A stretch of 64,000 bases of DNA, taken from assembly GCA_907165135.1 (NCBI GenBank), contig OU015567.1, positions 4,588,001 through 4,652,000 on the forward strand. Direction: 5' to 3'. Positions within the stretch are counted from its first letter, which is position 1, and the number at the start of each line of letters is the position of its first letter. The stretch comes from Oikopleura dioica (lineage: Eukaryota > Animalia > Chordata). The position numbers were made by a program, and so were the translations under genes. Of the stretch, positions 10,615-64,000 are shown in pieces. Under the pieces are notes generated by a model that was not told the origin of the DNA, made no database searches, and was given only the letters and a program-made list of their open reading frames with translations.

Positions 10615-10830
10615 GGGCAAGGTGAATAACAAAAAAAAAACTAAGCTTTAAAAATTTTAAGCTTTTTCATTTTTGACATGATTTTTCAGGCGGTGCGTTT
10701 TTAAGGCCGATTTAAACCCCGGTTGGCCGCTGACACCCTTAAAAACGCAACCCCTGAAAAATAATGGAAAAATAAAAAAGCTTAAAATTTTCAAAGCTTA
10801 GTTATTACTTTTTTTGTTAGTTACCCTATA
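10615..10830. repeat. Imperfect long hairpin (MITE-like)
   Basis: Left arm ...ctaagctttaaaaattttaagctttttcatttttgacatgatttttcaggcggtgcgtttttaagg pairs with right arm ccttaaaaacgcaacccctgaaaaataatggaaaaataaaaaagcttaaaattttcaaagcttag. Confidence 0.6.
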
Positions 10831-11305
10831 GAAACATTAAAGAAAAAAAATGTCAACTACTTGAAGCTTTATTAATAGTATTTCGGCAGATTAGCAAAAA
10901 ATTTTGTCTATCATAAACTCATAAAAATCATTACTGATTTCTCCATTAGTATGTTCTTCCAAATTTCCCTCGAAAAGTGATTAAAGTAATTGTCCCTAAT
11001 TGACTTACAAGCGCATAAAACTCGTTTCCGAAGAAAACGTAATTTGTTAAGATTACATGCTTAACGCTACGTGTTTGGTTGTTTCGAATCCAAATTATAA
11101 ACGCCGTTAGACGGTCAGAAGTCATCAATAACAAAGTGGATCGTGGCAAAAATATGTTGCGAGTTTTTATCATAACAATCATTTAATGAAGTCAGCATTC
11201 TAATTATGATCCCCGAGTTTTCTCGTTTTTAACCTCTCTGTGCTTGGCTCAGCAATCTGAGTGGTAAACTGACAAAGAAAAAATTCCTGAGTAAGGGTCT
11301 CTGAC

Positions 11306-11462
11306 GGGGAGGTGTCTGGAACCGACAAAAAATTCGACAAATTTTGCGTGGAAATTTTTAACCAATCAGAGATCTGGATTCGGCTTAGCGGCCAATCGGC
11401 AGCCGAGAAGCCGCCTACGCAAAATCTGTCGAAATTTTTTTGTCGGTTCCAGACACCATCCC
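11306..11462. mobile_element. MITE family B (TIR GG(G/A)xGGTGTCTGGAACCGAC...)
   Basis: Arms ggtgtctggaaccgacaaaaaattcgacaaattttgcgt and acgcaaaatctgtcgaaattttttgtcggttccagacacc are reverse complements. Related copies at about 40681-40815 and 49699-49853. Confidence 0.7.
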
Positions 11463-11543
11463 TCTCTGACTCAGCTTATTTCCATTGACAAGGATAAGTC
11501 TTTCATTCAAATATTTATAGAAACTGAGCTCCTGAGCTCAGAT

Positions 11544-11629
11544 ACCTGTGTCGAAAACCTGAGTCAGGTTTCTGAATAGCTTAAATGAAAAGCCGCACAG
11601 AAACCTGACTCAGGTTTTCGTCAAAGGTT
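11544..11629. repeat. Dispersed palindromic repeat family C (AAAACCTGAGTCAGG...CCTGACTCAGGTTTT)
   Basis: Inverted pair of motifs; also at about 17326-17398, 31615-31840 and 40821-40914. Confidence 0.7.
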
Positions 11630-11801
11630 GCTGAGCCTGGGAGCTCATCCTCTATGTATTTCAAAATATTGAACATATCCTTGTCAATTTATAAATGGTC
11701 GAATAAGCTAAGCGCTTTCTCGTACTGAATTAACGAAATATAATCTTACACTTTTTGAAACACAGAGAGAGCTCTGGAGAAAAGAGAATCATTCTTTGAA
11801 A

Positions 11802-13347
11802 ATGAAGCGAGAAATAATTTTAAGCCTTCTTTTTATTTTCCTGGCGCTGTTTTTTTCAATTGGAAATTATGCGCTGAAAAAACCTGACTCATCAAAAATG
11901 CCGGAAATTCTAAACTCGTCTCTTTTTCGAAGCTTTCCCGAACAGAGATTTTCTGAAGACAATTTCAAGCAGATAAAAATACGAATTGAAAGAGAAGAAT
12001 ATTCGGGGATCATCTCAGTTGATGTCGTTTCATTTTCTGAAGGAATCGACTTTTGTTACTTTTATAAGTTGAAAATGCCGAAGGTTCCTTTTGACATAAT
12101 GATGATCAACGAAACTGATAACTCTCATGCGAACTGGAACCGTGAGTCATTTATTGCTATTTTGATGAGGATGATTTACTATTTATACTATCAAAAAAAT
12201 GTTAAAATAAATAATTACACGCGACACTTTAAGGACCGCCCCCGTCAACAATTTTCGAAAAATCTATTTTCGGAATTTCAAAATTTTGACCCCGGAAATG
12301 GATTCTACAGGTCAAAAAAGAATTTGAGGCTTCTTTTTTGGGGGCCTATCTCGACTCTAACACCCTTAAAATCACGTTTGAAAATCGGACGAAAACTCAC
12401 GAAAAAGTCCAAACTTTGCTAAAATCTCAGATTTTTATTGGTCAAAAAGTACTCCGAACAAGTTTTTATGATAAATTGAACTTCTAGGAACTCTAAGAAG
12501 CCAAAATATGGCTTTTTTGAAATTTTTGGGGTCCTTAATTAATTTTAAAAAAGGGGATGAACCTTGTTCATGCTCTTACTTCCTGCAAAGAGCCCTTTGT
12601 TCATCCTTAAAGCCACGTAACCATTGATTTCTAGAAGGACCGTCAGTTTGGCTCAATGCTTCAATGGACAATCAAGGAAAAATAACAGCATCAGAAGAAC
12701 TCGCACCTCTTCTGGAAAGCTCGAAAAACAAGAACATCGACAAGCCCCTGTTTTTGATGCAGCATCATGATCCGATAAATAAGAGAATACAGACTTGCTA
12801 CTACTTCTTTGACGGCAGGTTATCAGAAAGTTTTTCTTATAAGAAATATCTTTACATTTGCGATGATCATCGATTTCTTGACAACAACAGTTCAACGCCG
12901 GATATCAGAAAAAGGTGGATGAAAAAAAAAAAAATGATTTTTATTATTTTAATTTAAAGTGATTCTCCCGACGAGTTACCTTGCAAGCCATTCATTCTCA
13001 CTGAATTGTTTCTACAAAATTTTATTTACCCAAAACGACTTCGTTGGGGTTTCGATAGCGAATTCTTCAGCGGCCTCACGAGATCTCAATACGCGAAAAG
13101 AGACCATTATGACACAAATATTGAGCTTTGCAATGACGAAAGTAGGTAGAAATCACAATTTCATTACTTTATTTTGACAGCGTATGCAATATACTGGCTG
13201 AGTTGCCGAAACGGGGTGCCTTGTCAAGATGGTTTTGACAAAGAATTTGGAGGTAAACATGCTTTTTTATTTTGCAATTGATTGTCGAATTTAGGCCGAT
13301 TGAAGGTGGTGCAACAGAATGAGTACAAAAGAGTCGTGTGCGTGTGA
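11802..13347 (+). CDS. Uncharacterised protein with N-terminal signal anchor (type II membrane or secreted), multi-exon
   Basis: MKREIILSLLFIFLALFFSIGNY..., followed by exons at about 12640-12828, 12960-13138, 13183-13250 and 13293-13347 (…GRLKVVQQNEYKRVVCV*) with GT-AG boundaries. A TTAA MITE follows the first exon. No family recognised. Confidence 0.5.
12229..12538. mobile_element. MITE family A, TTAA-flanked, TIR TTAAGGACC...GGTCCTTAA
   Basis: Starts ttaaggaccgccccc and ends ggggtccttaa. A reverse-oriented relative at 45319-45658 shares the internal segment (ctcgactctaacacccttaaaatc versus gattttaagggtgttagagtcgag). Confidence 0.7.
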
Positions 13348-13375
13348 CCCTTTTCATTCCGTCGAAGAAGCATCA

Positions 13376-14330
13376 TCAATCGCCACCACTGGACCTGTTG
13401 TTGGTCTCTTCATAAATTTCGTTCACTCTTATGGCAGTTCGCATAAGCAAACCTAAATTTCAAAAGAAATTGTCTCGAGTGGTCTCCGTTTGCCCAAGTC
13501 GCCGTTTGCCCAAGTGGGCAGACAAACTGGGCAGACGGCGACTTGGGCAAACGGCGACTTGGGCAAACGAAGACCACTCAATTGTCTCATTTAAAAAGAA
13601 ACTTACAGAGTTTGATAGGAATTGAAAGATCCACGGGAAAGGTCATTGTTGCTTTGTAGTTGATGTCTTTTACAATTGATAAAAATCCACCATCAGAAAT
13701 ATATTCAATTTGGCTGTCAAGAGTCGCACCTTCCTCCCCATCAACCTTGCTTGAGAAGAGAATTTGTTGAGCATTTTTTCCAGATCGTTTTGGTCGGCTG
13801 ATATCAAAAACCACATTCGACTTGTTATCCAACAGTTGAGCATGAGGATTGCATCCAAAAACCTGCCTGTAAAATTTTTCTAACGACTCTACATTCTAGA
13901 GTCTAGAATCAATGATCTTCCTACCTGAAGCTTCCAAGATGCTCTTGTCCGGCAAAAACACCGATGCAAACTTCATTCTACAAATATTCTTAGCTTATCA
14001 TTGAATAAGAAGTAAACAAACCAAGCAAAAGCAGAAACCGCACCATTGGCCTTTCTCCAAAGTCTCAGTTTTCAAAGCATTTCCAAGAGAAGGATGAGTG
14101 GCCGAATATTGCACTTCGAAATCGCAACAGCCTTTATGATTGACCTTTCCACTGATTTGGAAAAGCTCTTCGTCCTGACTATTCAAAACAGTAACACTCA
14201 TCTGTCCATATTTTTTCCGCGGGTCTTCTTGAAAAATCGCTTTGAATTGCGTTTCTAACAAAATATTTTCAAAAAAAAAATCTTAAGAACCTAAAAAACC
14301 TGTTTTCAAAAACTCAAATTGAGAACTCAT
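13376..14330 (-). CDS. Phospholipid scramblase (PLSCR)-like protein
   Basis: MSSQFEFLKT|ETQFKAIFQEDPRKKYGQMSVTVLNSQDEELFQISG...GCCDFEVQY...WCGFCFC...QVFGCNPHAQLLDNKSNVVFDISRP...TMTFPVDLSIPIKL|CLLMRTAIRVNEIYEE...*. The C-terminal FPxDL motif and Cys-rich central segment match scramblases. Confidence 0.65.
13490..13568. repeat. Short inverted-repeat element in the last scramblase intron
   Basis: ttgcccaagtcgccgtttgcccaag...cggcgacttgggcaaacggcgacttgggcaa. Confidence 0.7.
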
Positions 14331-14547
14331 CCTTTATCTCTCTTTGAAAATCGATCAAAATCGACTTTGTTTGTTGTCAGAATTGCGTTATTTTTACGCC
14401 CGGGTGTAATTGTGGTTTACTTTTATGAGTAGGGTGGAGAGTTAAAAAATGGGCTTTTTACTCGGTTGCTAACGATTTCTACGAAGATTGCTGACAAAGC
14501 TCATTTTTGGTATGCACTGACTACTAGTCAGTGACTACGTTGCTGAA

Positions 14548-14752
14548 CGTCGCTCAATGTCGCCCAATGTCGCCAAATGTCGCTTAACGTCGCCGGATGT
14601 CGCCTAATGTCGCCAAATGTCGCTGAATGTCGTCATTTTATTTTAAAATAGCTCAAATAATATAGTTATTTCCAGCGACATAAGGAGGCATTAGGCGACA
14701 CTCAGCGACATACAGCGACATTCGGCGACATTCGGCGATATTCGGCGACATA
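14548..14752. repeat. Inverted pair of 10-bp tandem arrays (ATGTCGCCxA)n ... (TCGGCGACAT)n
   Basis: About 8 tgtcgc units, an AT-rich spacer, then about 7 gcgaca units. Confidence 0.75.
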
Positions 14753-16047
14753 TGTCAGTTCCAGCTCATTTTTTGAATCTGACCTTGCTTTCATAAATTT
14801 GTTTCTTTTTAATTTATTAATGAAACTTCTCCTTCCGGATCATGGGCAAATGGAAACACGGAGTAAATTATTCATGGTGCTGTATTGTCTCCAAAATACT
14901 GGTCCACTGCCAAATTCGCCGTCACAGTCCAAAGACGCTCCTTGAAAACGCTCGAACTCCTGGCCCGCGGCCCCGTTTCGCGACGTTTGAATTTTTAGAA
15001 TTTGAAGAGAAAAAAATCGAAAATTCAAAATTGAAAAAAGGTTAAATCCTCCTTGAGTCGTTTTTGAATCAGCTCCGCTGATTACTTGAGCCGACTTGAG
15101 CCACTTCGATTTTTTCATTCTCTGAGAAAAAAAACACCCGATATTCGATTTTGCCCCAAATTAGACACAAAGCAATTGACTTTTTTCCTCCGTCGGAGAA
15201 AGAGGATTGAGAAAAAGAGGAGAACATGCCGAAGAAAATGATTCCCGAAGTTGAGAATAAGGTGATTACTGAAATCTTGACTGGTTCTTCTCTCATCATA
15301 AATTCTAGCTTCAAGTCCAAACAATCAACGCCGTGGCGAACCTCCAAAATCTACGTCGAAACGCGAAAAAATCAAGCATCAAATTGAAGAAATTCTTCTC
15401 TTTCAACCGCCACAAAATCCTCGAAAACGAAGAATCCTTTTCCGAATTTCCCTGAACACCAAATATAAACGGTCTCTTCCTTGATTTCAAGCAATTTATT
15501 TCAAGTTATTTACAAATAGCTTCTTATCGGCAGCTGATCGTATATTTCTTCTTGCGGGATAAACGAGGGCTTTTTAATTATTTTAATGAAGTGATAAGTT
15601 CGAGGATTAAAGCCCTTTATCTTGGAGGAAACGAAGCAGAACCAGCATAACCTGGAATCGTGTGATGGCTATAATTTGAGCGTATCGAAGTATGCTCGTA
15701 ATTAACCCGCTTTGAAGAGGCTCAACCAAGTTGCTTTTTGAACAAGAAATCGACAGTCTTTGAGACCTGATCCTGAGCTCCAAGGTGGTTCATTTCCATT
15801 TGTGATAAGGGGATATTTTGAGCATCACAAAAATTTTGATTGTTTCCATACTGATTTGCTGTTGAATAAGGCTGAGTTGCGACGTAGTTCGGGTCTGGTT
15901 GCTTATGATGTTTTTCATAAGAAGAAAAGTGAATTCAAGAGGAAAAAGTATTTTCTAAAATTATTAAAAGCTTACAAAATAAATCATAAGTAAAATTCAA
16001 ATCCCTTTCAAATTCAACATGTAAGTTGATCCGAAAATTGCCCAAAA

Positions 16048-18031
16048 TTAACGATTCTTATCGAATCTTATCGTAATAAAATTCAATATAATTTTTCGAG
16101 AATGCTTTGAAAAACTATCCTTAAACTGCATGATACCAGATGTGTTCCAAATTTGTTGAAGAATATTTGATTGATTCGTATTGTTGTTGTTGCTCAAATT
16201 ATTCTGCTCGAGTGGCAGCGGCTCTCGATTTTTAGACTCGCTTCCTACTCGCATATAAATGAGCGTGCCAATTATGGCGAAGGAGAATAAAACTCCGAAA
16301 GTAATCCCAACGATCAATCCTGGACGTGACTCCTCAGGTGCCAGTTCTCCGCCACGTTCCAAGTCTGCCAGCGCAGGGGATGGAATACCAGTGATTTTGG
16401 AGATTTGCTGATTGCTGCACTTGTGCATCGGGCATTCTTTCTTCAACTGGGCAGATTGGCTTAGTTGAGAATGTGGTGGCGGGTAGAAAATTGCTTCGTG
16501 AGAGCCACAACAGTCTTTGAGTCCACACATTCTAGCGTCAACTGGACTTCCGCTTCGATCAAGACAGATGCGGATTTCTTCGAGTTTTTGAGCCTCTCGA
16601 CGGCGACTTGGCTCGCAAGTACAGTGGATTGAAAAGAACTGAAATAATCTTCCATTTTCCACTTTTCAAAAATCTGAGAAAGCATCAGATAGTGCTGAAA
16701 GCTCACCTTAATAGATCTGATCGCACCAAACGCTTGAGCCCGTTTAATTAACGCCTCATTTATCTGCCTAATTGTATAAGTGTTTCTCTTAATTCGGCTC
16801 GTTCCTATTTCTGTAATTGCTCAAAATAAATACTTTTTAACAATCAATTAGGAAAATCATTTAACATTTAAAGCGCAGCAAAGAGAGAAAAGCCTGTCCC
16901 TCGTGAGCTTTGATCTCTTCCAGCGCCAGAACATCGGCAATTTTGAATCGTTGGGCGATTCCTATTGTTGCTTCTTTAAAAATCGGATGAGATAATCAAA
17001 GAACAAAAATGATGACTCAGCAGAATCAGAAAAGATCGTCTGTCCGCCTTACCCCCGATTGTCAGCTTCAATTAATTTTCATTGAATAATTTCACCCGTT
17101 CCAAAATACTCATATGCATTTCTGAATCTTTCCGGTCTGATGGCTCCGAATTTGCACCAGCTCTGAGCCCAAAGCCATTCGGATCCATATTCCTCGCATC
17201 TTAGTCCTCTCTTCTCCCTGTTGTTCATATTTGGCCACTGCGAAAGGAGCTGATAGTCCAGGTTTCCAGTTTGATTTGAGCTCAGGCGGGTGTAGATGGA
17301 ACAGCCTGAAACTTGGCTCGGCAATCTGTATAGAAAACCTGAGTCAGGCTTTGAAGAGCTAAAATGAAGAGCCGCAAAGCAGATCTTTAACACAGGTTGC
17401 CGATCCCAGGCCTGAACCCATCGTGTCGACTGGCCAAAAGCCCTTGATTTTCCAGCTGTTGAAATCGACGGCTTCGTCCATTGAGCATTCGCAGTCATTT
17501 TCATGCGACTCGTTTATCGCCTCACAAGTTGACTTTTGGGGATTCAAAAAGGCCCTTCGAGGAATAAGTCAGCTAAGTTTGACGTCTAAAAATGGAAAGA
17601 ACGATTATCGTGGAAGAAACTTTCACGTTCTTTTTCGCTTTTAAAATCCATGACTGGGGCCATTGTAACGCGAGAACATAATAACCACGGTCTGTGTCAG
17701 CGGTGGGAAAGCTTTGAACTTTACCGTTGTGGGTTCCAGGACGGCCGATGATCTTTTCGACAGGCTGAATCATTGTCTGTTTCTTTCGAAGGTTTAATAA
17801 GAAGCATTAGTGACTCTTCCTCAAACACTCACAAGTTGTGAGTCATAACTATATTTTTGGACTTCGCGTAATACTAATTTAAAAATGTGGTTTATCCGAT
17901 TACAAAAGAAAAAAATTCCCTTCTGAAAAATTTTTTTTTGTATTTTCAGCCTTTCACGGAACGTCTGCTCGACAAAAACGTATTTTTCCAAAGAGTGTAA
18001 AAATCAATAATCTTCCAAGTTCCGGCGCCAT
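16048..18031 (-). CDS. RNase T2-family protein with degenerate active site and C-terminal transmembrane helix
   Basis: Putative leader MAPELGRLLIFTLFG; GYYVLALQWPQS; CAS-I-like WKIKGFWP; LDYQLLSQWPNM; CAS-II-like WLWAQSWCKFG; AYEYF; QKLEEIRICLD; TM GLIVGITFGVLFSFAIIGTLIYM. Several exon junctions and both ends are uncertain. Confidence 0.75.
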
Positions 18032-18535
18032 ACTCTCTACGTCAGTATCAAAATCATATCTACTTCTATGCGCATTCGCTTCGGGGCTAAAAGAAATCGC
18101 GCTTCCGCCTGCCCAGTGATCCTCGCTAATGGAAGTTGTTTATGCTTCATTTGGAAAGTGAAATAACAGTTCGAAATCGGATCACCATTTTCGTCACTTG
18201 CGAAAGAACAGATTTTTTTCAATGAAGGAATAAATATGCCTGGAGAATCCTCTCATTGTCACATATAAAGACAAATTGACATTATGGTTGTTTTTGCACC
18301 CGAATGATTTTTATTGTAAAGTGCTTTTTTTATTCGATGGCTTGATTCTCTTTCATGTTGTCAATAATAAAGGCCTTAGTGTGACAGTTTTGAAAATATA
18401 TTTTTCTCACGTGATTGTTGACAACTTGCGCTTTCATCAGTTTTCTGGTCGGTGCAATTATTTTCAGGTACCATCATTAATATTTTGAATTTATATGTTT
18501 GTCTCGTGACGCTCTTGCGCCATCCCATGTTCGCA

Positions 18536-18543
18536 TATATAAA
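18536..18543 (+). promoter_or_regulatory. Candidate TATA box upstream of the secreted-protein gene at 18759
   Basis: TATATAAA about 215 bp before the ATG, in the intergenic region between divergent genes. Confidence 0.3.
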
Positions 18544-18758
18544 GCCAGCCCGTCGAGGAAAGTCCCACGAACTTCTCTTGAGTCTAAAAGACGATTCTCG
18601 ACACGAATTATCGAAAACAACGTGAGCTCGACGTGGAACGGTCAGCTCCGCTATTCGATTTCAAGTCATCGGACGCGGGGATTAAAAGCGACTGTAACTT
18701 AAACTTTGCCGGTAGTCGAGTATTCATCTAAGTGGCGTGAAAAAAAAAATCGAAGCAA

Positions 18759-19335
18759 ATGAAGATGATTGGACTCATAATACACTCAGTAGTATTATTA
18801 CACTCAGTTACAGGCAGATTCATTACGGCCCAGAGAAGGATGTTTAATGATCATCACAAGGTAAGATCGACAATAATTTCTTGCAACGATTTCATCATTT
18901 GTCCTTTCATAACTCAATAAAACCTTATTCTAGAGAGGAAATGTCAGACAAGCAATCTACACAAATTTCCATACAAACAACCTTCGCTCTCCCCAAACCA
19001 CGCCCCAATTTGTCCATTCAAAATGCCCAGAAATCATCCTTCACTCTTATCAACAGTACCTGCCGCTTTTTCCCGAATGTTCTGAAGAAGCACTTCAAAT
19101 CGAAAAAGCGAGAAATGCCGTTTCTCATCTTCGATCAAGCTCGAAAAGCCAGACTCGGAAGAAACTTGTGAACGGCTGCTTGGATCTTTCAAAAAGCCGT
19201 TTTGTCAAAAATGAGGACAAGAGAAGCTGGAAGAACTACTGTTTGAGCTTTGTGGAAAATATTCAAAAAGAGCGAGATCCTTATAGGAAAACAAATGATG
19301 TTTCAAATGTTTATCGCCGCTATATTACTAATTAA
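18759..19335 (+). CDS. Small secreted orphan protein (about 170 aa, 2 exons, 4 Cys)
   Basis: MKMIGLIIHSVVLLHSVTGRFITAQRRMFNDHHK, GT-AG intron 18861-18933, then RGNVRQAIYTNFH...CPEII...FPECSEE...NGCLDLS...KNYCLSF...YRRYITN*. The spliced frame is open. Confidence 0.6.
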
Positions 19336-19452
19336 TCTTTTTCGATATTTCTGCTTATTTCTGTATTCTAGTAAATAAACCATTTTTCAGTAAGCTTCTG
19401 AGTAAATCCCCTCTGGTGTTTCGATGTTTATTTTTCGCAGAACGATGTAATT

Positions 19453-22400
19453 ATGAGAGTTGTAGCGATTTTTTCGGTCAATATCAGTAATATGCAGCCA
19501 AGAGAATTGAGTAGAGAAAAAAATAGAGGAATGGCTTCTCAAATTTTTGCCAAAACTCAAACGAACCACCACTAGAACAGCAAAATGTCAATTGATTGCT
19601 TCTGTTGAAAGAACCGAATTTGCTGAAGATGGACACTCATATAAATGGGATACTTTGGCTTTCAACGGAGATTACGTTTGTGTTGGGGAAAAGGGTCTCA
19701 AAACTCTTCATTATGCGCATCCATCTCCCTTACAGAAAGAAATAAGAAAAAACAATCCGAATTTTTACAGAAAAAATATCAGTCGCTGGGATATTCTCGA
19801 AGAAAATGGTTGTTGGGTGGTCGACCGCTCGATGAAAAATGATTTTTTATCAGAAGGTGGCGAGGCATTGGTAATTACAGCAAAATTTGGAGACCTCGAG
19901 ACGGCAGTTAGAGTTCAAGCATTTGATCCTTTCGTTTTCACTGATAAATTTCCTTACACGGAAATCGAGTTTGAAATTCATCTTGCCTCTGGTAAATTGG
20001 GATGAAAAAATTACAAAGACAATTATGAATTTAAGATTTCAGAAACAACCAAGAAGATGTTCGATTACATGAATTTCCTTCACATACCAATATTATTAAA
20101 AATTATGTGAACATTGAACTGTTTCATCCATTGGACGTCGAGCGCTTGGATTGTCTTGGATGGATTACAATTATGGAAAAAGGAGAGACTAATTTACGGA
20201 AACTTCTGAAGGACGGTAATTTATCGATTGAAAAGAGACGCGAAATTGCACAAGGAGTAAGATCAGCGATGGACTATTTGTACGTCAATGGCACCGATCA
20301 CCTCGACCTTAAAATGCAAAATGTTGTTATGGTTAATGGGATACCCAAACTTGTTGATTTCGGGCTGGTGGAAAGTCGCCACAAAAAAATTGGTTATCGC
20401 AAGATGGGCTGCACTCGGCGTAGATCAAAATACAGATTTTCCCCCTCTATTTGTAATCATTTGCAATTTTGACAAATATGATCGTTTTTTAGTCGCTGGG
20501 ACTCCCGGATTTTCATCTCAATGTCAGCTTACGAGTGGAAAAGGTTTCAATTTGGGAACAAATATATTTAGGGTTTTTCACGGAACGGCGCGGCCCGCTC
20601 TGAGGTCCATCCACGAATATTAAAAGTCTTCTATTGAAGCGAAATTTATAATTCAAAAAATGAAACCGACTAATTCAAGGGAATAGATTCATAATATCGC
20701 ATTAGTTTTCCATTCGAATGCCAGAATTCGCTGTGAGACGGTTTTTCTTACTAAATTTCGATTTTTCAATCTGAGTACATCAAAATACACTCTCTATTTT
20801 CAAATATGTAAGATATAAGATGTTTAATTTTTAGCTCACAAAATTTGGGATTTCGGAAACATTCGGAAGGTGTTCAAATCGTCAGATAAGTGAGTGAAAG
20901 TGACTGCGCGCTAGTGCTTTACGCCGCTGCGCGGGACGCCCAAAAAACATTAGCGCGCGCCATAATCCCAGCGGGTGGTTTCTCTGACCTAATATCCGAA
21001 ATCTGATGCGAATTACACCGGGTGATTTGCATAAACAATTTCCCGGAAGTGTCAAGCTTAGTATTTGAGATGAATTAGACGGCTTTATATCACTCGGGAC
21101 AACAAAACTGATGAGATCCTTTTTTATCTTCCTTATCATTATTGCACCACCACCAGGTCAGAATTTGATAATTATTTTCACATATTTGAAATCAGCGGCT
21201 CAAGTAACACTTATTTAGAAATTTTAAGGCCCATTGAATGATATACCACTTTCCGTGAAAAACCCTAAATATATTTATTCATATTTTTTGCGAGTGGAAT
21301 ACTGGGTGGACGCTTCTTTATAAACCTCTTGACAAGGAAGAAAAAAAGAGAAATAAATAAACTCATCTCGGTAATATCCAGTATGCAACCTATAATTATG
21401 ATTATTAAAAGGAATGCAAGGGAACTCCTATCAGAGTTTTTGAGTACAATCGGGACAGCTTCTTCGAAGACACTCCGCTTTTATCTTTGGAAAACTCGAG
21501 CGATCAATTCGCCCTCAATGACGAAGTAATGACCCAGTCTTATCAAATATCTACTTTGAAGCAGAATTTAACCAAATTCGTCAAACAGAATGTCCAAAAT
21601 TTGAGCAAAAATGTTCGGGACCAAAAGCTAAGCAATCTCTGCGTTTCGTTCTCTGTCACCAATCTTATTCGATATGCGATGAAAAATGATCTAGGCTTCT
21701 TCGATCTCAATCAATCGCACAAATTTGAAAATATCATGTCTTCTCTTAACTTGGTTATCTATCCAAGAAGTATGGCTGGATTGAATTTGAATCCGAGTCA
21801 ACGGGAGCTAGGAGACCAACTGTCAGATATTGAAGTTATTCTTAAACGTGTCTGCATGGGAACTTATCTGATGCCGAGCGGTTGGCATATTATCAGGATG
21901 CTTGGTCATTTTACCGATCCCCGCCCAGTTGAATCAGACTGTATTTGCAAAACAGGTTTCTTTATTAACCCTGTCCGCATATCGACCTAGGTGTAGGTTA
22001 ATTTACTTTTAAACGAAATTATACTTTTGGAAAAACGACATTTCTTCACAGTTGACATTTGAAATTTGATCGTGTCCAGGAGATAGCTCAGCCTTTAATC
22101 TTTCCATTCATGTCCTTTCGAAATTTTTATCACGACTGAAAGACCCTCAAAAGCCCGACCTACGCGTAGGTCGATATGCGGGCAGGGGTGACAAATTTTT
22201 CATGCGGGCAGGGATTAAAAGATAAAATTATTCTACGGTTTTAGTTTATCTTCATCATGATTATCAATTTCACAGACCTTTGACTGTAACTGGAGTTATC
22301 TTGAGAAAAAATGAGACTTATCCGATATTCCACCAGATGACGCTCGATTCTATTCAAAACGGATGTTTTATCCTTAAGAACAGTCAATCGAGTGACTCGA

Positions 22401-23035
22401 TGATAAGAATAAGAAGGACAGATCCATTTTACGTTCATGAAGAAGAGTACTTTCGACTTTGTCACCAGAACGAAGGAGCCTTTTATTGGCAAGACAATTC
22501 CATGGTTGAAGTCATAAGTTTTAATCAAATGGACACTGATAAATGGTATCTTCTTCCTCAAGCCTTCTCCCTAGAACTCAGACCAAGACGAATTTCCTCG
22601 TTGTTTTGGATAGCAGCGGTACCATCGGCAAAATTATCCCGTACATTAACCTGGTGGAAATACTTCAAATTTGTTCTCTTCAATGATGTTCCCGATTTTA
22701 TGTTGGGAGTCTTAGAATCATGGAAACTTATAAAAGAAGACCCTCTTGCTCGCAAAAGCAATAATTTCTTTGAAATCGTTAGAAACTTCGATAATTTCAA
22801 AAATAGGGTGACAAAAGAGACACAGATGGGACTGTCAGATGCAGAGACATTCCTTGCCTTTAACGAAAAAATAAACGCTCGTTATGGATATATGGGACCG
22901 CCTTATCGAAAATTTTACAAAAAACCAAGAGTTGACTGTCGAGTACGAAATGGTGTTCTGACCATAGGACATTATCCGCTTCAAAAAGAACAAGAAGTAG
23001 TGAGACCCATTTTTCGACTCGTCTTGAATAACTGA
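19453..23035 (+). pseudogene. Protein-kinase-like domain fused to papain-like (C1-type) cysteine protease domain; interrupted by a hAT-type MITE in this assembly
   Basis: Kinase motifs FLSEGGEALV, TAVRVQ, HTNII, HLDLKMQN, LVDFGL, AGTPGF. Protease motifs VRDQKLSNLCVSFS, FHQMTL, FILKNS. Introns 19992-20035, 20435-20492 (GA-AG), 21371-21411 and 21897-22275 (GA-AG). TE 20569-21267 lies in an exon. Two +1 A homopolymer shifts in this copy (about 19520 and 21345) are absent from the second copy. Confidence 0.7.
20569..21267. mobile_element. Non-autonomous hAT-type DNA transposon (699 bp)
   Basis: 17-bp TIRs TAGGGTTTTTCACGGAA (20569-20585) and TTCCGTGAAAAACCCTA (21251-21267). 8-bp TSD AATATATT at 20561-20568 and 21268-21275. 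No transposase ORF. Confidence 0.85.
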
Positions 23036-23435
23036 AATCTGCCGAGTGCAGTTATTTTGTGATTTGAAATCACTGATTTCCGGACCCATAAAAGGCTTTT
23101 CGATAATCCATATCAATAAAAGAATATTTATTCATTTTTCTCATCTGAAAAAGTGTCTTCTGAATAAATGTCGACTTACTGCTCAGTTACATTGGCTCGG
23201 TGAAGTTGTGGGCGACCGCAGCGTAAAATCAGCAAAATTTAGCAAATTTTCTCATCACGAAAATGGTGTATTGTGTGTGATGGCCGCAATTTCGCGTCGC
23301 CTAATTAATCCATCAGCCTCCCTTACCTTCCGCATTTCAAGGCATTTGCATAGCTGTACATTTTCACGTCAAACGCATAAGATTTTTTCTTCCTGATTCT
23401 AGAGCAACACATTCTAGAGATACTAAATATTTTCT

Positions 23436-26138
23436 ATGAAGACCTTTATATGGATGCTTGGCGCGATAGGAACGAGTTCAGATCATTTATGAAATTATTT
23501 TTCTATAATTCAAAAAATACGACAAATTTTTATTCAACTGAAAATTTTTGAAAGATAAGCTTACTCAAAACTCTTTATCAGGCGTTTCAAGCTTCAATCT
23601 CGACCCTACTCCACCCAACAACTACACCACCTCCACCAAGGGTTGTCCCTGTTTCTTCGATCAGAAGAAAACCACTGAATGCCCTTGCTGCGTCGATGAA
23701 AATTCCTGCCCATGCTCCGTAAGTGCCAATGCCTCCTCTTCCTAGATGGATTATTTTTCAAATTCAGTGGCCTTACGACGACAGATGTGGAGATTGCAAT
23801 ACCGGACACGGTTGCCTTCCGGAGCCGATCAATATTGATACGCTTTCCGATCGCGGTTGCACTTGTCAGGATGACGATATTTTCGGGCTAGAGAAGGGGA
23901 GCTGCGCTTGTTGTACACCCTACAGTCATTCCGGGAAGCACATTTGTCCCTGCGCATATCCTTATCATGTAAGCCTGAAGCTCGAAAATAACCTCCTAAA
24001 TCTCTATCTTAGCATATGTGTGTCGAGTGTAGTGAAGCCCAAAGCTGCGGAAACCACATCGAAGCCGCTCTGTACCAAGAACTGTACCCAAACTACTTCA
24101 AACCAGTCCAAGCATCGGAATCACTAATGCTCTCTGACGTGAGATCCGATCGTGAAATCGCGCCGGGGTCGAACATCTGCCACGAAATTCCACACAAGAT
24201 CGAGAACGGTTTTACAATTTGCGACAAAATCCCAAAAAAGGGAAAAGCATGCGTGTTCTTCTGCGATGATGGTTACCAAAGAGTGGGAAATTACAGGAAC
24301 GAGTTTTTGATGTAAAGACTTTTTGAGACTTCTTCAGCTTTTATTAATCTTTTCTGATAGTTTTATCATCGCCATAAACTTGATAATAGGGCGGAGTGTG
24401 TGTGCTCGGAGCTGGGATGTAACTGGAATGATGAGCCGGGCTATGAGATGCCGTATTGCGTCAAGGATGCCTGTGCAGATGAGCCTTGTCAGAATGGAGG
24501 CACTTGCAAAGCTGATGAAGGAAATGTTTGTATAGAAGCATTGATATTTTGACTATTGTAACTTACAATTTGTAAGTATCAAAGAAAATCAGTTGAACAA
24601 CATGAAAAAGATGGATTTACTTGCGATTGTAAGCCGGGATACCTTGGAACTCTCTGCGAAGTCGAACTGATGGCGGATTTTGTCGGCGGTCTATTCGGCG
24701 ATGATATCATGGAAGAACCAATGAGCTCACCAACCGACGCTCCTGAGTTCCGTGTCGTTTCTCCTCAGACCACGACTACTGCTGTAAGAGAATATGACGA
24801 AGAGGAAGAGGAGGAGGAAGAGGAAGATGTTCAATCGACTTCTGTTGGGCGATTCGCGAGACGAAAAAAATTCGGAAAGAATAAAGATCGAAATACGTGC
24901 CCGCCCTTGGACGGCGGCGAAAATGGAGGACTCAGGTGCACAAAAGGCTTTAAAAAATCTTCTACTTGTCATTTGGTCTGCGATGACGGTTTTACTCCGT
25001 CAAATACGAAGTTCTCTAAGCCCAGATGCATCTGCAATTCCAATAGGAAAGAGCGCGAAAACCATTTCTCTTCAATAATTGTTATGATAATTTTCAAGCT
25101 CGAAGAAAGATGCTCCTGGGACCGGTCAAACTCGTTCAAGCTGGCAAAATGCTCCGCTTGGCCAAAACCAGAAGGCGAAAACGTGAACGACGCGATTGTC
25201 AACAGCGATAATAGTCAACGAATGTTCGTTCAACAAACGAAATGCCCTCCTCTGACAAAACCGGCGAATGGAAATGTTCGTTGCACAGAAGTCAACAAAG
25301 ATGGTAATGAAGCATGTCAAGGCAGCTTTATAAAGAAATTTAAGGGTCTCGATGTCAGTTTTTGTGCAAATCTGGATTCAATGTTTCGAAAGCTAGATTT
25401 GCCCGCTGCGCATGTGTTGATGGCAAATGCATGTGGAACAAGGTTCGTTTTGGCTCTAGAAAAAGGCGTGAAGAAATTTTTTAGGAAGAATTTTACACAG
25501 AACCACTTTGCGAGGACAAAGATGAATGTGCTCTTGGAAATCATAATTGCGCCGCGGACATGCATTGTGTCAACAAACCTGGATCATTTTTTGTGAGTTT
25601 TCATGATAAAAGAAAGTCATTTCTTGACAATTTTTCAAGTGCGTGGAATCTGATTCCCAAGTCCTCCGACGATGCGATTCAAATCCTTGCGGACGAGCTG
25701 GAATTTGCTCGATAACTGCCGCGGGCTACAGATGCGAGTGCAAAGATGGATTCAGATTTGCTCAAGGAACATGTGTCGATGTTGACGAATGCGAAGTTGG
25801 CATTGATAAGTGTTTTTCAAAAGCGATGTGTGAGAACTTCGAAGGTGGCTATTCGTGCAGATGCCCATCCGGCTATGGTGATGGTTTGACCGAGTGCTTA
25901 GGGTCAAAGTAAGCGACTTTTCCAAAATTATCCACCGAAAATGAACTTCAGGGACGATTTGACTTGCACTCAAAAACGCAGTTTCCGAACAAATCCCCTC
26001 CCAAACTACGTTGCTCCCAACGCTTGCTGCCTTTCCACCCCGTTCAACACCGATTTGAACTGCTGCTGCGAAGGAAAATTGCACCCAATTGATGGCTGCC
26101 CCTGCATGGCCGCCGATTATTCTGACATTCAATATTAA
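23436..26138 (+). CDS. Secreted modular protein: 2 Cys-rich repeats, 3 CCP/sushi, EGF and cbEGF modules, C-terminal CC..CC motif
   Basis: Signal MKTFIWMLGAIG; KGCPCFFD...ECPCCVDENSCPC and RGCTCQ...SCACCT...ICPC; sushi CHEIPHKIENG...CVFFCDDGY, CPPLDGGENG and CPPLTKPANG; EGF CADEPCQNGGTC and CDSNPCGRAGIC; cbEGF DVDECEVGIDKC...CENFEGGYSCRC; ends ACCLSTPFNTDLNCCCEGKL...QY*. Confidence 0.8.
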
Positions 26139-50500: not shown

Positions 50501-50530
50501 TCATTGTACTTCGTTCAGTTACGTATTGCT
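50501..50530 (+). other. Untrimmed Oxford Nanopore ligation adapter
   Basis: tcatTGTACTTCGTTCAGTTACGTATTGCT matches the ONT adapter top strand AATGTACTTCGTTCAGTTACGTATTGCT. Confidence 0.93.
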
Positions 50531-55459: not shown

Positions 55460-55487
55460 CCCTTTTCATTCCGTCGAAGAAGCATCA

Positions 55488-61562: not shown

Positions 61563-64000
61563 ATGAGAGTTGTAGCGATTTTTTCGGTCAATATCAGTAA
61601 TATGCAGCCAAGAGAATTGAGTAGAGAAAAAATAGAGGAATGGCTTCTCAAATTTTTGCCAAAACTCAAACGAACCACCACTAGAACAGCAAAATGTCAA
61701 TTGATTGCTTCTGTTGAAAGAACCGAATTTGCTGAAGATGGACACTCATATAAATGGGATACTTTGGCTTTCAACGGAGATTACGTTTGTGTTGGGGAAA
61801 AGGGTCTCAAAACTCTTCATTATGCGCATCCATCTCCCTTACAGAAAGAAATAAGAAAAAACAATCCGAATTTTTACAGAAAAAATATCAGTCGCTGGGA
61901 TATTCTCGAAGAAAATGGTTGTTGGGTGGTCGACCGCTCGATGAAAAATGATTTTTTATCAGAAGGTGGCGAGGCATTGGTAATTACAGCAAAATTTGGA
62001 GACCTCGAGACGGCAGTTAGAGTTCAAGCATTTGATCCTTTCGTTTTCACTGATAAATTTCCTTACACGGAAATCGAGTTTGAAATTCATCTTGCCTCTG
62101 GTAAATTGGGATGAAAAAATTACAAAGACAATTATGAATTTAAGATTTCAGAAACAACCAAGAAGATGTTCGATTACATGAATTTCCTTCACATACCAAT
62201 ATTATTAAAAATTATGTGAACATTGAACTGTTTCATCCATTGGACGTCGAGCGCTTGGATTGTCTTGGATGGATTACAATTATGGAAAAAGGAGAGACTA
62301 ATTTACGGAAACTTCTGAAGGACGGTAATTTATCGATTGAAAAGAGACGCGAAATTGCACAAGGAGTAAGATCAGCGATGGACTATTTGTACGTCAATGG
62401 CACCGATCACCTCGACCTTAAAATGCAAAATGTTGTTATGGTTAATGGGATACCCAAACTTGTTGATTTCGGGCTGGTGGAAAGTCGCCACAAAAAAATT
62501 GGTTATCGCAAGATGGGCTGCACTCGGCGTAGATCAAAATACAGATTTTCCCCCTCTATTTGTAATCATTTGCAATTTTGACAAATATGATCGTTTTTTA
62601 GTCGCTGGGACTCCCGGATTTTCATCTCAATGTCAGCTTACGAGTGGAAAAGGTTTCAATTTGGGAACAAATATATTTAGGGTTTTTCACGGAACGGCGC
62701 GGCCCGCTCTGAGGTCCATCCACGAATATTAAAAGTCTTCTATTGAAGCGAAATTTATAATTCAAAAAATGAAACCGACTAATTCAAGGGAATAGATTCA
62801 TAATATCGCATTAGTTTTCCATTCGAATGCCAGAATTCGCTGTGAGACGGTTTTTCTTACTAAATTTCGATTTTTCAATCTGAGTACATCAAAATACACT
62901 CTCTATTTTCAAATATGTAAGATATAAGATGTTTAATTTTTAGCTCACAAAATTTGGGATTTCGGAAACATTCGGAAGGTGTTCAAATCGTCAGATAAGT
63001 GAGTGAAAGTGACTGCGCGCTAGTGCTTTACGCCGCTGCGCGGGACGCCCAAAAAACATTAGCGCGCGCCATAATCCCAGCGGGTGGTTTCTCTGACCTA
63101 ATATCCGAAATCTGATGCGAATTACACCGGGTGATTTGCATAAACAATTTCCCGGAAGTGTCAAGCTTAGTATTTGAGATGAATTAGACGGCTTTATATC
63201 ACTCGGGACAACAAAACTGATGAGATCCTTTTTTATCTTCCTTATCATTATTGCACCACCACCAGGTCAGAATTTGATAATTATTTTCACATATTTGAAA
63301 TCAGCGGCTCAAGTAACACTTATTTAGAAATTTTAAGGCCCATTGAATGATATACCACTTTCCGTGAAAAACCCTAAATATATTTATTCATATTTTTTGC
63401 GAGTGGAATACTGGGTGGACGCTTCTTTATAAACCTCTTGACAAGGAAGAAAAAAGAGAAATAAATAAACTCATCTCGGTAATATCCAGTATGCAACCTA
63501 TAATTATGATTATTAAAAGGAATGCAAGGGAACTCCTATCAGAGTTTTTGAGTACAATCGGGACAGCTTCTTCGAAGACACTCCGCTTTTATCTTTGGAA
63601 AACTCGAGCGATCAATTCGCCCTCAATGACGAAGTAATGACCCAGTCTTATCAAATATCTACTTTGAAGCAGAATTTAACCAAATTCGTCAAACAGAATG
63701 TCCAAAATTTGAGCAAAAATGTTCGGGACCAAAAGCTAAGCAATCTCTGCGTTTCGTTCTCTGTCACCAATCTTATTCGATATGCGATGAAAAATGATCT
63801 AGGCTTCTTCGATCTCAATCAATCGCACAAATTTGAAAATATCATGTCTTCTCTTAACTTGGTTATCTATCCAAGAAGTATGGCTGGATTGAATTTGAAT
63901 CCGAGTCAACGGGAGCTAGGAGACCAACTGTCAGATATTGAAGTTATTCTTAAACGTGTCTGCATGGGAACTTATCTGATGCCGAGCGGTTGGCATATTA
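61563..64000 (+). pseudogene. Duplicate kinase/papain-like fusion gene, cut by the window end, with the same hAT MITE
   Basis: ORF 61563-62114 is open from the ATG here; reads ...LDKEEKREINKLIS| in frame at about 63440-63478. Confidence 0.65.
62678..63376. mobile_element. Duplicate of the hAT-type MITE
   Basis: Same TIRs and AATATATT TSD (62670-62677, 63377-63384). Confidence 0.85.

What the first reader, a model, noticed from the sequence alone, without database searches (positions are those of the whole stretch)
19453..23035. Hidden kinase-papain protease fusion gene
Seen: four separate ORF fragments join into one reading frame of about 783 aa once four introns, the hAT MITE and two homopolymer A's (absent in the second copy) are removed. 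The N-terminal half carries kinase motifs (FLSEGGEALV, AVRVQ with Arg at the VAIK lysine, HLDLKMQN, DFG, AGTPGF). Through a 41-nt phase-0 GT-AG intron (21371-21411) it runs into a domain with VRDQKLSNLCVSFS (Cys at 21640) and FHQMTLDSIQNGCFILKNS (His 22331, Asn 22379). Established: papain reads VKNQGSCGSCWAFS, with the same Gln-to-Cys spacing, and His159-Asn175 are 16 residues apart, as here. Inference: a cytosolic protein with no signal peptide that couples an atypical kinase to a possibly active C1-like cysteine protease, an architecture I do not know from characterised animal proteins.
Basis: partly seen in the sequence, partly recalled or inferred. Interest (0 to 1): 0.82.

Follow-up and report, generated by a model that had tools for sequence, protein, structure and literature searches.

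The report
MITE-broken kinase–papain-fold protease fusion gene
This is one transposon-interrupted copy of a large, unstudied gene family of the tunicate Oikopleura dioica, in which one protein joins an unusual protein kinase to a very divergent papain-type cysteine protease. The family is real and I found no paper on it, but its function is untested and this copy is probably disabled.

Summary
This requires removing a 699-bp MITE plus one 8-bp target-site duplication, and two extra homopolymer A's.

- **Kinase half:** it passes Pfam Pkinase, and a relative folds as a protein kinase. The beta-3 lysine is Arg family-wide, while HxDxKxxN and DFG are invariant.
- **Protease half:** it matches no Pfam model. 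A paralogue's AlphaFold model aligns only with clan-CA cysteine peptidases (50 of 50 top chains, best Der p 1, Z 9.2). Gln, Cys, His and Asn are conserved and present here.
- **Fusion:** paralogues carry both domains in one uninterrupted ORF, and 75 of 77 protease loci have the kinase exon just upstream.
- **Family:** at least 120 loci in this genome (OKI2018_I69). Named relatives are all O. dioica. I found no paper.
- **Ubiquitin hint:** two members carry UBA tails.

Caveats:
- The MITE sits inside a conserved kinase exon.
- The "second copy" belongs to a 42-kb repeat that differs only in homopolymer lengths, so it is not independent.
- The 148-aa tail is an orphan.
- No RNA data could be obtained.
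- C1 membership is not shown by sequence.

The scan has already noted this family on other DNA of this genome (18 notes).

The parts
19453..19991 (+). Exon 1. It holds the N-terminal conserved region and the kinase N-lobe (SEGGEA glycine-rich loop, AVRVQ with Arg at the beta-3 lysine position). An extra A in the run 19511-19517 breaks the frame in this copy only. A second in-frame ATG at 19492 is the likelier start by comparison with paralogues.
19992..20035 (+). Intron 1, 44 nt, GT-AG, phase 1.
20036..20419 (+). Exon 2, the kinase core: HLDLKMQN catalytic loop and DFG. Pfam Pkinase scores 43.2 bits against a cut-off of 31.7.
20420..20492 (+). Intron 2, 73 nt, GT-AG, phase 1.
20493..20568 (+). 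Exon 3, first part (AGTPGF ... GTNIF), cut off by the MITE. It ends with the left copy of the TSD at 20561-20568.
20569..21275 (.). Non-autonomous transposon of 699 bp (20569-21267) plus the right TSD copy (21268-21275). It has a perfect 17-bp TIR (TAGGGTTTTTCACGGAA) and an 8-bp TSD (AATATATT), so it is hAT-like. It sits inside the conserved kinase motif FxFCDW. Removing these 707 nt restores the family sequence exactly.
21276..21370 (+). Exon 3, second part (IHIFCEWNTGWTLLYKPLD..., the end of the kinase C-lobe). An extra A in the run 21335-21341 shifts the frame in this copy only.
21371..21411 (+). Intron 3, 41 nt, GT-AG, phase 0, between the kinase half and the protease half.
21412..21955 (+). 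Exon 4: a conserved linker (LSLENSSDQFALND...) and the helical lobe of the papain-fold domain. Gln is at 21622 and the candidate nucleophile Cys at 21640 (DQKLSNLCVSFS).
21956..22244 (+). Intron 4, 289 nt, GT-AG, phase 1. It is lengthened by an inverted-repeat element whose 15-bp perfect arm cores lie at 21975-21989 and 22167-22181. In L005 the gap between the two ORFs at this position is about 75 nt.
22245..22588 (+). Exon 5, family part: the beta-sheet lobe of the papain-fold domain. His is at 22331 (FHQM) and Asn at 22379 (ILKNS). It ends with WYLLPQAFSLEL, where the compared public models either stop within about 3-5 residues (five) or carry a short tail (P0007).
22589..23035 (+). Exon 5, orphan tail of 148 codons plus the TGA stop (23033-23035). 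Its only match in the genome is the duplicate copy. Pfam and the ESM Atlas find nothing.
61563..64000 (+). The same gene in the second unit of the ~42.1-kb repeat; it runs off the window. It lacks the two extra A's but carries the same MITE.

Best explanation
The locus is one member of a family of at least 120 loci in Oikopleura dioica. Each encodes a single chain made of an N-terminal conserved region, a eukaryotic-type protein kinase domain and a very divergent papain-fold (clan CA) cysteine peptidase domain.

**Shown here**
- The exon model of this copy.
- The kinase fold and the papain-type fold, each predicted on a close relative.
- The fusion in one ORF in paralogues.
- Family-wide conservation of the peptidase Gln/Cys/His/Asn and of the kinase HxDxKxxN and DFG, with Arg fixed at the beta-3 lysine position.
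- A MITE inside a conserved kinase exon of this copy.

**Inferred**
- The C-domain is an active, intracellular, site-specific cysteine peptidase.
- Because two family members carry a UBA tail, its substrates are most likely ubiquitin or ubiquitin-like conjugates, or specific proteins, rather than bulk protein.
- The kinase-like half binds nucleotide and regulates or targets the peptidase. It may phosphorylate weakly or atypically.
- The tandem arrays and 35-55% identity between copies suggest a fast-diversifying role such as defence or conflict.
- This particular copy is probably disabled. The MITE interrupts the reading frame, and no canonical splice removes it exactly. The two frameshifting A's are most likely nanopore homopolymer errors rather than mutations.
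For: **Gene model**
- Exons, phases and GT-AG introns were worked out.

**Kinase half**
- Pfam Pkinase scores E 4e-11 on exon 2.
- An AlphaFold model of a full-length relative's N-half has pLDDT 84.2 and pTM 0.83.
- Foldseek gives at least 500 matches at E <= 0.001, and all 46 listed are protein kinases (GAK, TTK, PKR, CDKs, IRAK4; E about 2e-7, probability 1.0).
- Conservation: S-x-G-G-E-A 24/24; Arg at the beta-3 position 25/26; catalytic-loop Asp, Lys and Asn 32/32 each; DFG Asp 31/31.

**Peptidase half**
- The AlphaFold model of paralogue L020 has pLDDT 71.9 overall, with most 10-residue blocks of the core (81-339) at 83-93 and loop blocks at 45-65.
- VIA-align against 48,161 chains: all 50 listed chains are clan-CA peptidases or papain-fold domains. 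Der p 1 gives Z 9.2 over 163 residues; calotropain, xylellain, cathepsin B and caricain give Z 8.3-9.1; C39 PCAT1 gives 7.8.
- ESM Atlas fold search: 7 of the 10 rows are named C39-like, C70 or C10 peptidase clusters; the other three are unnamed hypothetical proteins.
- In the model, Cys lies at the N-terminus of helix 88-104, His on strand 235-245, and Asn just after strand 248-252, as in papain.
- Conservation: Gln 49/49, Cys 49/49, His 33/36, Asn 29/34. All four are present in the window.

**Fusion**
- Paralogues L013, L014, L016 and L017 have both domains in single ORFs.
- 75 of the 77 best protease loci have a family kinase exon 0.6-2.7 kb upstream on the same strand.
- Public 640-707-aa models have both domains.

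**Family size and state**
- 126 protease-exon matches and 116 kinase-exon matches were found, most without stop codons.

**Ubiquitin link**
- 2 of the 11 UBA (PF00627) matches in the genome lie directly after family C-domains, and both score above the Pfam cut-off.

**MITE and sequencing errors**
- MITE anatomy and copies.
- The homopolymer-only differences fit a nanopore assembly (PMC8008620).
Against: - No sequence model places the C-domain in any peptidase family. Peptidase_C1_2 reaches only E 0.006 (15.9 bits against a cut-off of 22). 25 of 26 members have no C1 hit at all. A PF00112 scan of the genome misses the family. A PDB profile search finds nothing. hhalign against O. dioica cathepsins finds nothing.
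- Foldseek alone gave no match below E 0.001. VIA Z values of 8-9 are only modestly above the tool's stated background.
- The fold model is of a paralogue, not of the window's own spliced protein.
- Lys-to-Arg at beta-3 usually abolishes phosphotransfer, so the kinase half may be a pseudokinase.
- No RNA evidence could be obtained, so the splicing, expression and status of this copy are untested.
- The window copy deviates at 11 of 121 family-conserved positions, including Pro-to-Ser next to the Cys.
- The link to ubiquitin rests on two UBA-tailed members only.
Confidence: 0.7

Rival explanations
1. This copy is a working gene. The MITE is removed from the transcript by splicing, so a slightly altered but in-frame kinase-peptidase protein is made.
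For: One in-frame GT-AG pair exists around the element: donor at 20573 inside the TIR and acceptor at 21294 after a T-rich tract (722 nt). It leaves no stop codon. MITE-derived introns are noted elsewhere in this genome by another reader (item 4; not checked by me). All other exons are open, and the catalytic residues of both domains are kept.
Against: That splice would delete IHIFCE, which includes the acidic residue of the FCDW motif (Asp or Glu in 25 of 27 members), and add one Arg. No shift within the TSD gives an AG 3' end for exact removal (read directly). There are no RNA data.
Confidence: 0.2
2. The C-terminal domain has the papain fold but is not a protease. It could be a binding module (pseudo-peptidase) or carry out another clan-CA chemistry such as transglutaminase, acyltransferase or amidase.
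For: No peptidase sequence model matches. The paralogue pair L014/L015 has Ser instead of Cys. The papain fold hosts several chemistries (general knowledge), and 'a shared fold shows no function' (tool note).
Against: Gln, Cys, His and Asn are kept in nearly all members, with papain-like spacing and papain-like placement on the secondary structure. The best structural matches are true peptidases.
Confidence: 0.2
3. The many copies are the cargo of a mobile or selfish element rather than a host gene family.
For: There are more than 100 copies. Transposons are active nearby.
Against: Copies are only 35-55% identical in protein, and no high-identity bursts were seen apart from assembly duplicates. 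They lie in tandem arrays, for example C1 16.1-16.6 Mb and C2 11.6-12.7 Mb, as multi-exon genes with short GT-AG introns. Pfam scans of the paralogue ORFs found only kinase-type domains, no transposase or integrase.
Confidence: 0.05
4. The kinase ORFs and the downstream ORFs are two neighbouring genes, and the joined frame is a coincidence.
For: In the window the parts are separated by a stop-containing stretch, a MITE and frameshifts.
Against: Four paralogues have both domains in one ORF. 75 of 77 loci show the same order and strand. The phase-0 GT-AG intron joins the two frames exactly.
Confidence: 0.03

Closest known systems
Papain family, MEROPS C1A (cathepsins L/B/K, Der p 1, caricain)
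   Same: - They are the best structural neighbours (Z 8.3-9.2, 150-167 residues aligned).
- The residue order Gln, Cys, His, Asn is the same, with Gln-Cys spacing 6 and His-Asn spacing 16.
- Cys is at a helix N-terminus, and His and Asn are on a beta hairpin.
- There is a local [FY][IV]LxN[ST] motif like YILIKNSW.
   Different: - There is no detectable sequence homology.
- There is no obvious signal peptide, no matched propeptide, no CGSCW or GCNGG motif, and no Trp after the Asn.
- It is fused behind a kinase.
- The genome's ordinary cathepsins are separate genes.
Bleomycin hydrolase / aminopeptidase C, MEROPS C1B (Pfam Peptidase_C1_2)
   Same: - It is the only peptidase model with any sequence signal: E 0.006 over profile positions 32-97, which span the active-site Cys.
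- C1B enzymes are cytosolic and lack a signal peptide (general knowledge).
- Yeast Gal6 appears in the fold list at Z 5.2.
   Different: - The score is below the curated cut-off (15.9 against 22 bits).
- Only 1 of 26 relatives shows even a weak hit.
- The structural score is lower than for C1A.
Clan-CA ubiquitin/UBL proteases (UfSP1/2, ATG4, ZUFSP) and C39 double-glycine peptidase domains (PCAT1, ComA)
   Same: - Same fold class: C39 Z 7.2-7.8, UfSP 6.0-6.3, ATG4 6.2, ZUFSP 5.3-6.1.
- The Atlas neighbours are C39-like.
- These are intracellular, site-specific peptidases.
- Two family members carry a UBA tail.
   Different: - They rank below C1A.
- There is no sequence match.
- The third catalytic residue here is Asn, as in papain.
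- Ubiquitin binding was not supported or refuted by any test here.
Eukaryotic protein kinases with a non-lysine beta-3 residue (KSR-type pseudokinases with Arg; WNK, which has no beta-3 Lys); nearest structures GAK, TTK, PKR
   Same: - ePK fold.
- HxDxKxxN and DFG are intact, and a glycine-rich loop is present.
- Arg replaces the beta-3 Lys, as in mammalian KSR (my own knowledge, not tested here).
   Different: - Only profile positions about 75-160 of Pkinase match.
- The C-lobe is short and APE is replaced by TPGF.
- There is a conserved 140-residue N-terminal extension.
- It is fused to a peptidase.
- It is not an orthologue of any named kinase family.
hAT-superfamily MITEs
   Same: 8-bp TSD, short perfect TIR starting TAGGG, 699 bp with no long ORF, and several near-identical copies.
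   Different: The superfamily is inferred from TSD length and TIR only. No autonomous partner was sought.

Membership tests
Peptidase C1 (papain family; Pfam PF00112 / PF03051) | Sequence match to the family model above the curated cut-off | tested here: not met
   PF03051 scores 15.9 bits against a cut-off of 22 (E 0.006) on the window exon. PF00112 shows no hit. 25 of 26 relatives have no C1 hit. The genome scan with PF00112 finds only ordinary cathepsins. hhalign against O. dioica cathepsins finds nothing.
Peptidase C1 (papain family; Pfam PF00112 / PF03051) | Papain fold: a helical lobe with Cys at a helix N-terminus and a beta lobe carrying His and Asn | tested here: met
   Tested on the AlphaFold model of paralogue L020. 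The top 50 of 48,161 chains are all clan CA, and C1A is best at Z 9.2. The test used a paralogue and the family alignment, not the window's joined protein.
Peptidase C1 (papain family; Pfam PF00112 / PF03051) | Catalytic Gln, Cys, His and Asn in this order and conserved | tested here: met
   The window has Gln 21622, Cys 21640, His 22331 and Asn 22379. Family counts are 49/49, 49/49, 33/36 and 29/34.
Peptidase C1 (papain family; Pfam PF00112 / PF03051) | Proteolytic activity dependent on the Cys | not testable with these tools
   This needs biochemistry.
Clan CA (papain-like fold) in general | Structural similarity to clan-CA members well above unrelated folds | tested here: met
   No non-clan-CA fold appears among the 50 best VIA rows. 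In the Atlas fold search, 7 of 10 rows are named C39/C70/C10 clusters and the other three are unnamed. Papain-type peptidases (cathepsins L/K/V, staphopain) make up about half of the weak Foldseek rows.
Eukaryotic protein kinase (Pfam PF00069) | Sequence match above the curated cut-off | tested here: met
   43.2 bits against a cut-off of 31.7 on window 20107-20469. Paralogues score 29.6-44.8 bits, four of five above the cut-off. Only profile positions about 75-160 are matched.
Eukaryotic protein kinase (Pfam PF00069) | Bilobal kinase fold | tested here: met
   The model of P0005 residues 1-420 has pLDDT 84.2. Foldseek probability is 1.0 to GAK, TTK, PKR and CDKs. The test used a relative 41-48% identical to the window exons.
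Eukaryotic protein kinase (Pfam PF00069) | Beta-3 (VAIK) lysine | tested here: not met
   The window has AVRVQ. Arg occurs in 25 of 26 members and Lys in one.
Eukaryotic protein kinase (Pfam PF00069) | Catalytic-loop Asp and Asn, and DFG Asp | tested here: met
   The window has HLDLKMQN and DFG. The family is invariant at these positions, 32/32 and 31/31.
hAT-like MITE | 8-bp TSD, terminal inverted repeats, multiple copies with the same ends, no transposase ORF | tested here: met
   TSD AATATATT and a perfect 17-bp TIR. Four other copies covering 1-699 at 94-95% identity. The longest ORF inside is 85 aa with no family hit sought. The superfamily assignment itself is an inference.

The most novel reading that the evidence does not exclude
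The family is an appendicularian invention in which a nucleotide-binding, kinase-like switch controls a ubiquitin- or UBL-directed papain-fold peptidase in one chain. It has expanded to more than 100 fast-diverging tandem copies as a defence or conflict system in an animal with a very reduced genome. If so, it would be a previously unknown type of animal signalling or immune effector.
Probability: 0.12. Interest if true: 0.8.

Novelty: new variant of a known kind. Interest (0 to 1): 0.55.

Why it matters
Both domains are of known kinds, but I found no description of a protein kinase fused to a papain-fold cysteine peptidase. Three full-text searches gave nothing, and no Pfam model matches the peptidase half.

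A family of more than 100 such genes in a chordate with one of the smallest animal genomes implies strong selection for an unknown function. Intact members could be tested directly with activity-based probes and with kinase and ATP-binding assays.

For genome annotation, the result gives a fold and candidate catalytic residues to a large set of deposited 'protein kinase domain-containing' or 'uncharacterized' O. dioica proteins. This locus adds a dated example of a MITE hitting a coding exon. It also flags a probable 42-kb assembly duplication and homopolymer frameshifts in OKI2018_I69.

Tried and rejected
- **RNA evidence:** No reads could be laid, and splicing and expression remain untested.
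- **Joined spliced protein:** Every search, alignment and fold used single exons by reference or single-ORF paralogues. The length and frame of the model rest on phase arithmetic.
- **Sequence route to C1:** the Pfam scan of 26 C-domains, a PDB profile search with A3 (the one row, an acyl-homoserine-lactone synthase at E 0.32, is noise) and hhalign of A3 against thin O. dioica cathepsin profiles (Neff about 2, so a weak test) all gave nothing. My first PDB profile search was swamped by kinase columns in the alignment and says nothing about the C-domain.
- **Failed alignment:** a mixed cathepsin-fragment alignment (A4) was misaligned and I discarded it.
- **ESM Atlas by features:** the best rows were unnamed Bdellovibrionota clusters at 0.91 and a fucose isomerase cluster at 0.90. 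Peptidase_C1 clusters scored only 0.88-0.89. This is a lead at most.
- **Tail 22589-23032:** there is no paralogue, no word-search hit, no Pfam hit and no Atlas hit.
- **Rfam on 19000-23500:** no match.
- **Complex prediction, paralogue C-domain with O. dioica ubiquitin:** the verdict was 'no answer'. This is no evidence either way.
- **Exact splicing of MITE plus TSD:** none of the nine registers within the TSD ends in AG (read), so I rejected it.
- **Transposon-cargo reading of the family:** rejected; see the rivals.
Full report
**Where we are**

The window is G000:C5:4588001-4652000 of a 64.28-Mb, 19-contig genome. A family member found later carries the name Oidioi.mRNA.OKI2018_I69.chr2... 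on a 16,158,756-bp contig. The published OKI2018_I69 assembly of Oikopleura dioica has 64.3 Mb in 19 scaffolds and was built from nanopore reads (PMC8008620). The organism is therefore O. dioica, Okinawa lineage.

**The observation**

I rebuilt the model exon by exon:

| Part | Coordinates | Note |
|---|---|---|
| e1 | 19453-19991 | |
| intron 1 | 19992-20035 | |
| e2 | 20036-20419 | |
| intron 2 | 20420-20492 | |
| e3a | 20493-20568 | |
| insertion | 20569-21275 | 707 nt |
| e3b | 21276-21370 | |
| intron 3 | 21371-21411 | phase 0 |
| e4 | 21412-21955 | |
| intron 4 | 21956-22244 | |
| e5 | 22245-23035 | ends in TGA |

All four introns are GT-AG. With one A removed from each of the runs 19511-19517 and 21335-21341, the phases close and give 808 codons. 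The frame rests on phase arithmetic and on each exon being open in its frame.

**The insertion**

It is a 699-bp element with a perfect 17-bp terminal inverted repeat (TAGGGTTTTTCACGGAA) and an 8-bp target-site duplication, AATATATT. Four other copies cover positions 1-699 at 94-95% identity elsewhere in the genome. This is a non-autonomous transposon, and 'hAT-like' is a fair inference from the 8-bp duplication.

The element sits inside the family-conserved kinase motif. The window reads GTNIF|IHIFCEW, where the family has NxFYFLFCDW. Removing the element plus one duplication copy restores the family sequence with no residue missing. The insertion is therefore recent and hits coding sequence.

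**The second copy**

Window 8388-21892 matches 50522-64000 at 99.8% identity. Fetching the genome beyond the window shows that the repeat continues through a whole unit of about 42.1 kb.

All differences but one substitution in the first 13.5 kb are homopolymer lengths, and copy 1 is always the longer. This is what unpolished nanopore sequence, or an assembly duplication, looks like.

Copy 2 is therefore not independent evidence. It does make it likely that the two frameshifting A's are sequencing errors rather than mutations. Both copies carry the MITE.

**The kinase half**

- Exon 2 passes Pfam Pkinase (43.2 bits, cut-off 31.7), though only profile positions about 75-160 match.
- I modelled the N-terminal 420 residues of a full-length public relative (P0005) using a 40-row family alignment that included the window's exons. 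The model has pLDDT 84.2 and pTM 0.83.
- Foldseek returns at least 500 matches at E <= 0.001, and every one of the 46 listed is a protein kinase. The nearest are GAK, TTK, PKR, CDKs and IRAK4 (E about 2e-7, probability 1.0).
- Across the family, S-x-G-G-E-A is invariant (24/24). The catalytic-loop Asp, Lys and Asn are 32/32 each, and the DFG Asp is 31/31. The beta-3 lysine position is Arg in 25 of 26 members.

It is thus a real kinase fold under purifying selection on its catalytic loop, with an unusual ATP-site residue. From general knowledge, Lys-to-Arg at this position normally cripples phosphotransfer. Whether these are weak, atypical kinases or nucleotide-binding pseudokinases is open.

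**The C-terminal half**

No Pfam model reaches threshold. The only hint is Peptidase_C1_2 at E 0.006 over the stretch holding the Cys. Only 1 of 26 relatives shows even a weak hit to it.

I modelled paralogue L020, a single 339-codon ORF that is 49% and 39% identical to the window's two exons, using a 52-row alignment. The model has pLDDT 71.9 overall. Most 10-residue blocks of the core (residues 81-339) score 83-93, with loop blocks at 45-65, and the first 80 residues are poor.

- Foldseek found nothing below E 0.001, though papain-type peptidases (cathepsins L/K/V, staphopain) make up about half of its weak rows.
- The exhaustive VIA-align search of 48,161 chains gave 50 listed rows that are all clan-CA peptidases or papain-fold domains:
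  - Der p 1: Z 9.2 over 163 residues at 3.7 A.
  - Calotropain, xylellain, cathepsin B, caricain: Z 8.3-9.1.
  - C39 domains: Z 7.2-7.8.
  - UfSP, ATG4, ZUFSP: Z 5.3-6.3.
- The ESM Atlas fold search gave 7 of 10 rows from named C39-like, C70 and C10 clusters; the other three were unnamed hypothetical proteins.

The Z values are moderate, but the uniformity of the list is telling. In the model, the conserved Cys starts helix 88-104, the His lies on strand 235-245, and the Asn follows strand 248-252. This is the papain arrangement.

Gln, Cys, His and Asn are kept in 49/49, 49/49, 33/36 and 29/34 aligned members, and all four are present in the window copy.

My conclusion is a papain-fold domain with a plausible catalytic set, closest in shape to C1A. 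Membership of family C1 by sequence was tested and not met.

**Is it one protein?**

Yes, for the family.

- Searching the genome with the window's exon 4 gives 126 matches. Searching with exon 2 gives 116.
- For 75 of the 77 best protease loci, a family kinase exon lies 0.6-2.7 kb upstream on the same strand (my comparison of the two lists).
- Paralogues L013 (655 codons), L014 (669), L016 and L017 hold the Pfam kinase hit and the protease match in a single uninterrupted ORF.
- Public O. dioica gene models of 640-707 aa have both halves and are labelled only 'protein kinase domain-containing protein'.

**Relatives elsewhere**

- A profile search of 1.84 billion representatives found 205 proteins at E <= 0.001, mostly short fragments.
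- Of ten checked, every one with a name is O. dioica. The rest are unnamed ENA or JGI contigs.
- Three literature searches found no description of the family.
- The scan itself has noted this family on other DNA of this genome 18 times, and follow-ups reached similar conclusions. I used those notes as leads only.

**Function**

Nothing is measured; this is what the anatomy suggests.

The family is large and lies in tandem arrays (for example C1 16.1-16.6 Mb and C2 11.6-12.7 Mb). Most copies are free of stop codons, and copies are only 35-55% identical. This is a diversifying gene family, not a burst of a mobile element.

Of 11 matches, 2 lie directly after family C-domains, and both score above the curated cut-off:

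- C5:4552582-4552656 (-), only 35 kb from this window.
- C1:7141428-7141505 (+).

In each, the exon reads MGFEEE... after a short intron. By my rough estimate, chance would give about 0.015 such coincidences.

I therefore favour an intracellular, site-specific peptidase acting on ubiquitin-type conjugates or specific proteins, regulated or targeted by the kinase-like half. I hold this loosely. A fold-based test of ubiquitin binding gave no verdict and counts neither way.

**This copy**

- The MITE interrupts a conserved exon. No register within the duplication gives an AG acceptor for exact removal.
- One in-frame GT-AG alternative (20573-21294) would delete six conserved residues, including the acidic residue of the FCDW motif.
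- The copy also differs from the family at 11 of 121 conserved positions, including Pro-to-Ser next to the Cys.
- Its last 148 codons have no relative anywhere. In the compared public models the protein either stops about 3-5 residues after WYLLPxAYSLxL or, in P0007, runs on into a short tail.
- By my own estimate, an open stretch of 148 codons at this base composition has a chance probability of about 4e-5, so the tail is probably coding or was until recently. What it is remains unexplained.
- I could get no RNA data.

I rate the copy as probably disabled (about 0.7), and the family as real and functional.

**Verdict**

The finding is a new domain combination built from known folds. It is undescribed in the literature I could search, and it is of moderate to good interest.

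Noticed in passing
window 8388-50521 versus 50522-64000 and beyond (L033, L034): A whole unit of about 42.1 kb is repeated in tandem at 99.3-99.95% identity. The differences are almost all single-base-run lengths, and the first unit is always the longer in the stretch compared base by base (8388-21892). It is probably an assembly artefact or a very recent duplication. Every gene in it appears twice.
   Followed up: partly
window 20873-21077 (positions 305-509 of the MITE): The G+C-rich middle of the MITE matches about 30 other loci at 73-84% identity without the MITE's ends. It may be a second repeat family nested in, or shared with, the element. Rfam finds nothing there.
   Followed up: partly
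window 21969-22187, inside intron 4: An inverted-repeat element, with 15-bp perfect arm cores at 21975-21989 and 22167-22181, lengthens this intron to 289 nt. In paralogue L005 the gap at the same position is about 75 nt. I did not count its copies.
   Followed up: no
window 22589-23035: An open 148-codon tail follows the point where the compared family proteins normally end or carry only a short tail. It has no relative in the genome, Pfam, the word search or the ESM Atlas. AATAAA occurs at 23115, 80 nt after the stop.
   Followed up: partly
L036:756-857:- (G000:C5:4552582-4552656) and L037:2629-2763:+ (G000:C1:7141428-7141505): Two family members have a UBA-type exon (MGFEEE...) just after the papain-fold domain. 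These are 2 of only 11 UBA matches in the whole genome.
   Followed up: partly
L014:2666-4672:+ and L015:2527-4248:+ (G000:C4 around 3.23 and 3.285 Mb): This pair of near-identical paralogues has Ser in place of the candidate catalytic Cys (AQRERFLSVPFSV). Both are followed by the same neighbouring 458-codon ORF, so the pair is itself a local duplication about 55 kb apart.
   Followed up: no
family alignment A2, residues 28-80 of L020; window 21480-21615: The segment before the peptidase core (ISLxxxSxxFCLDDPNLTKSxQMSxLKQ) is among the best-conserved parts of the family, yet it is modelled with pLDDT of only 42-45. It could be a docking, autoinhibitory or self-cleavage segment.
   Followed up: no
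P0003, P0004, P0005 (public Bergen-lineage models), residues 1-30: Some full-length members start with a 15-residue hydrophobic stretch followed by a basic cluster, which could be a membrane anchor or signal sequence. The window copy and most Okinawa paralogues lack it.
   Followed up: no
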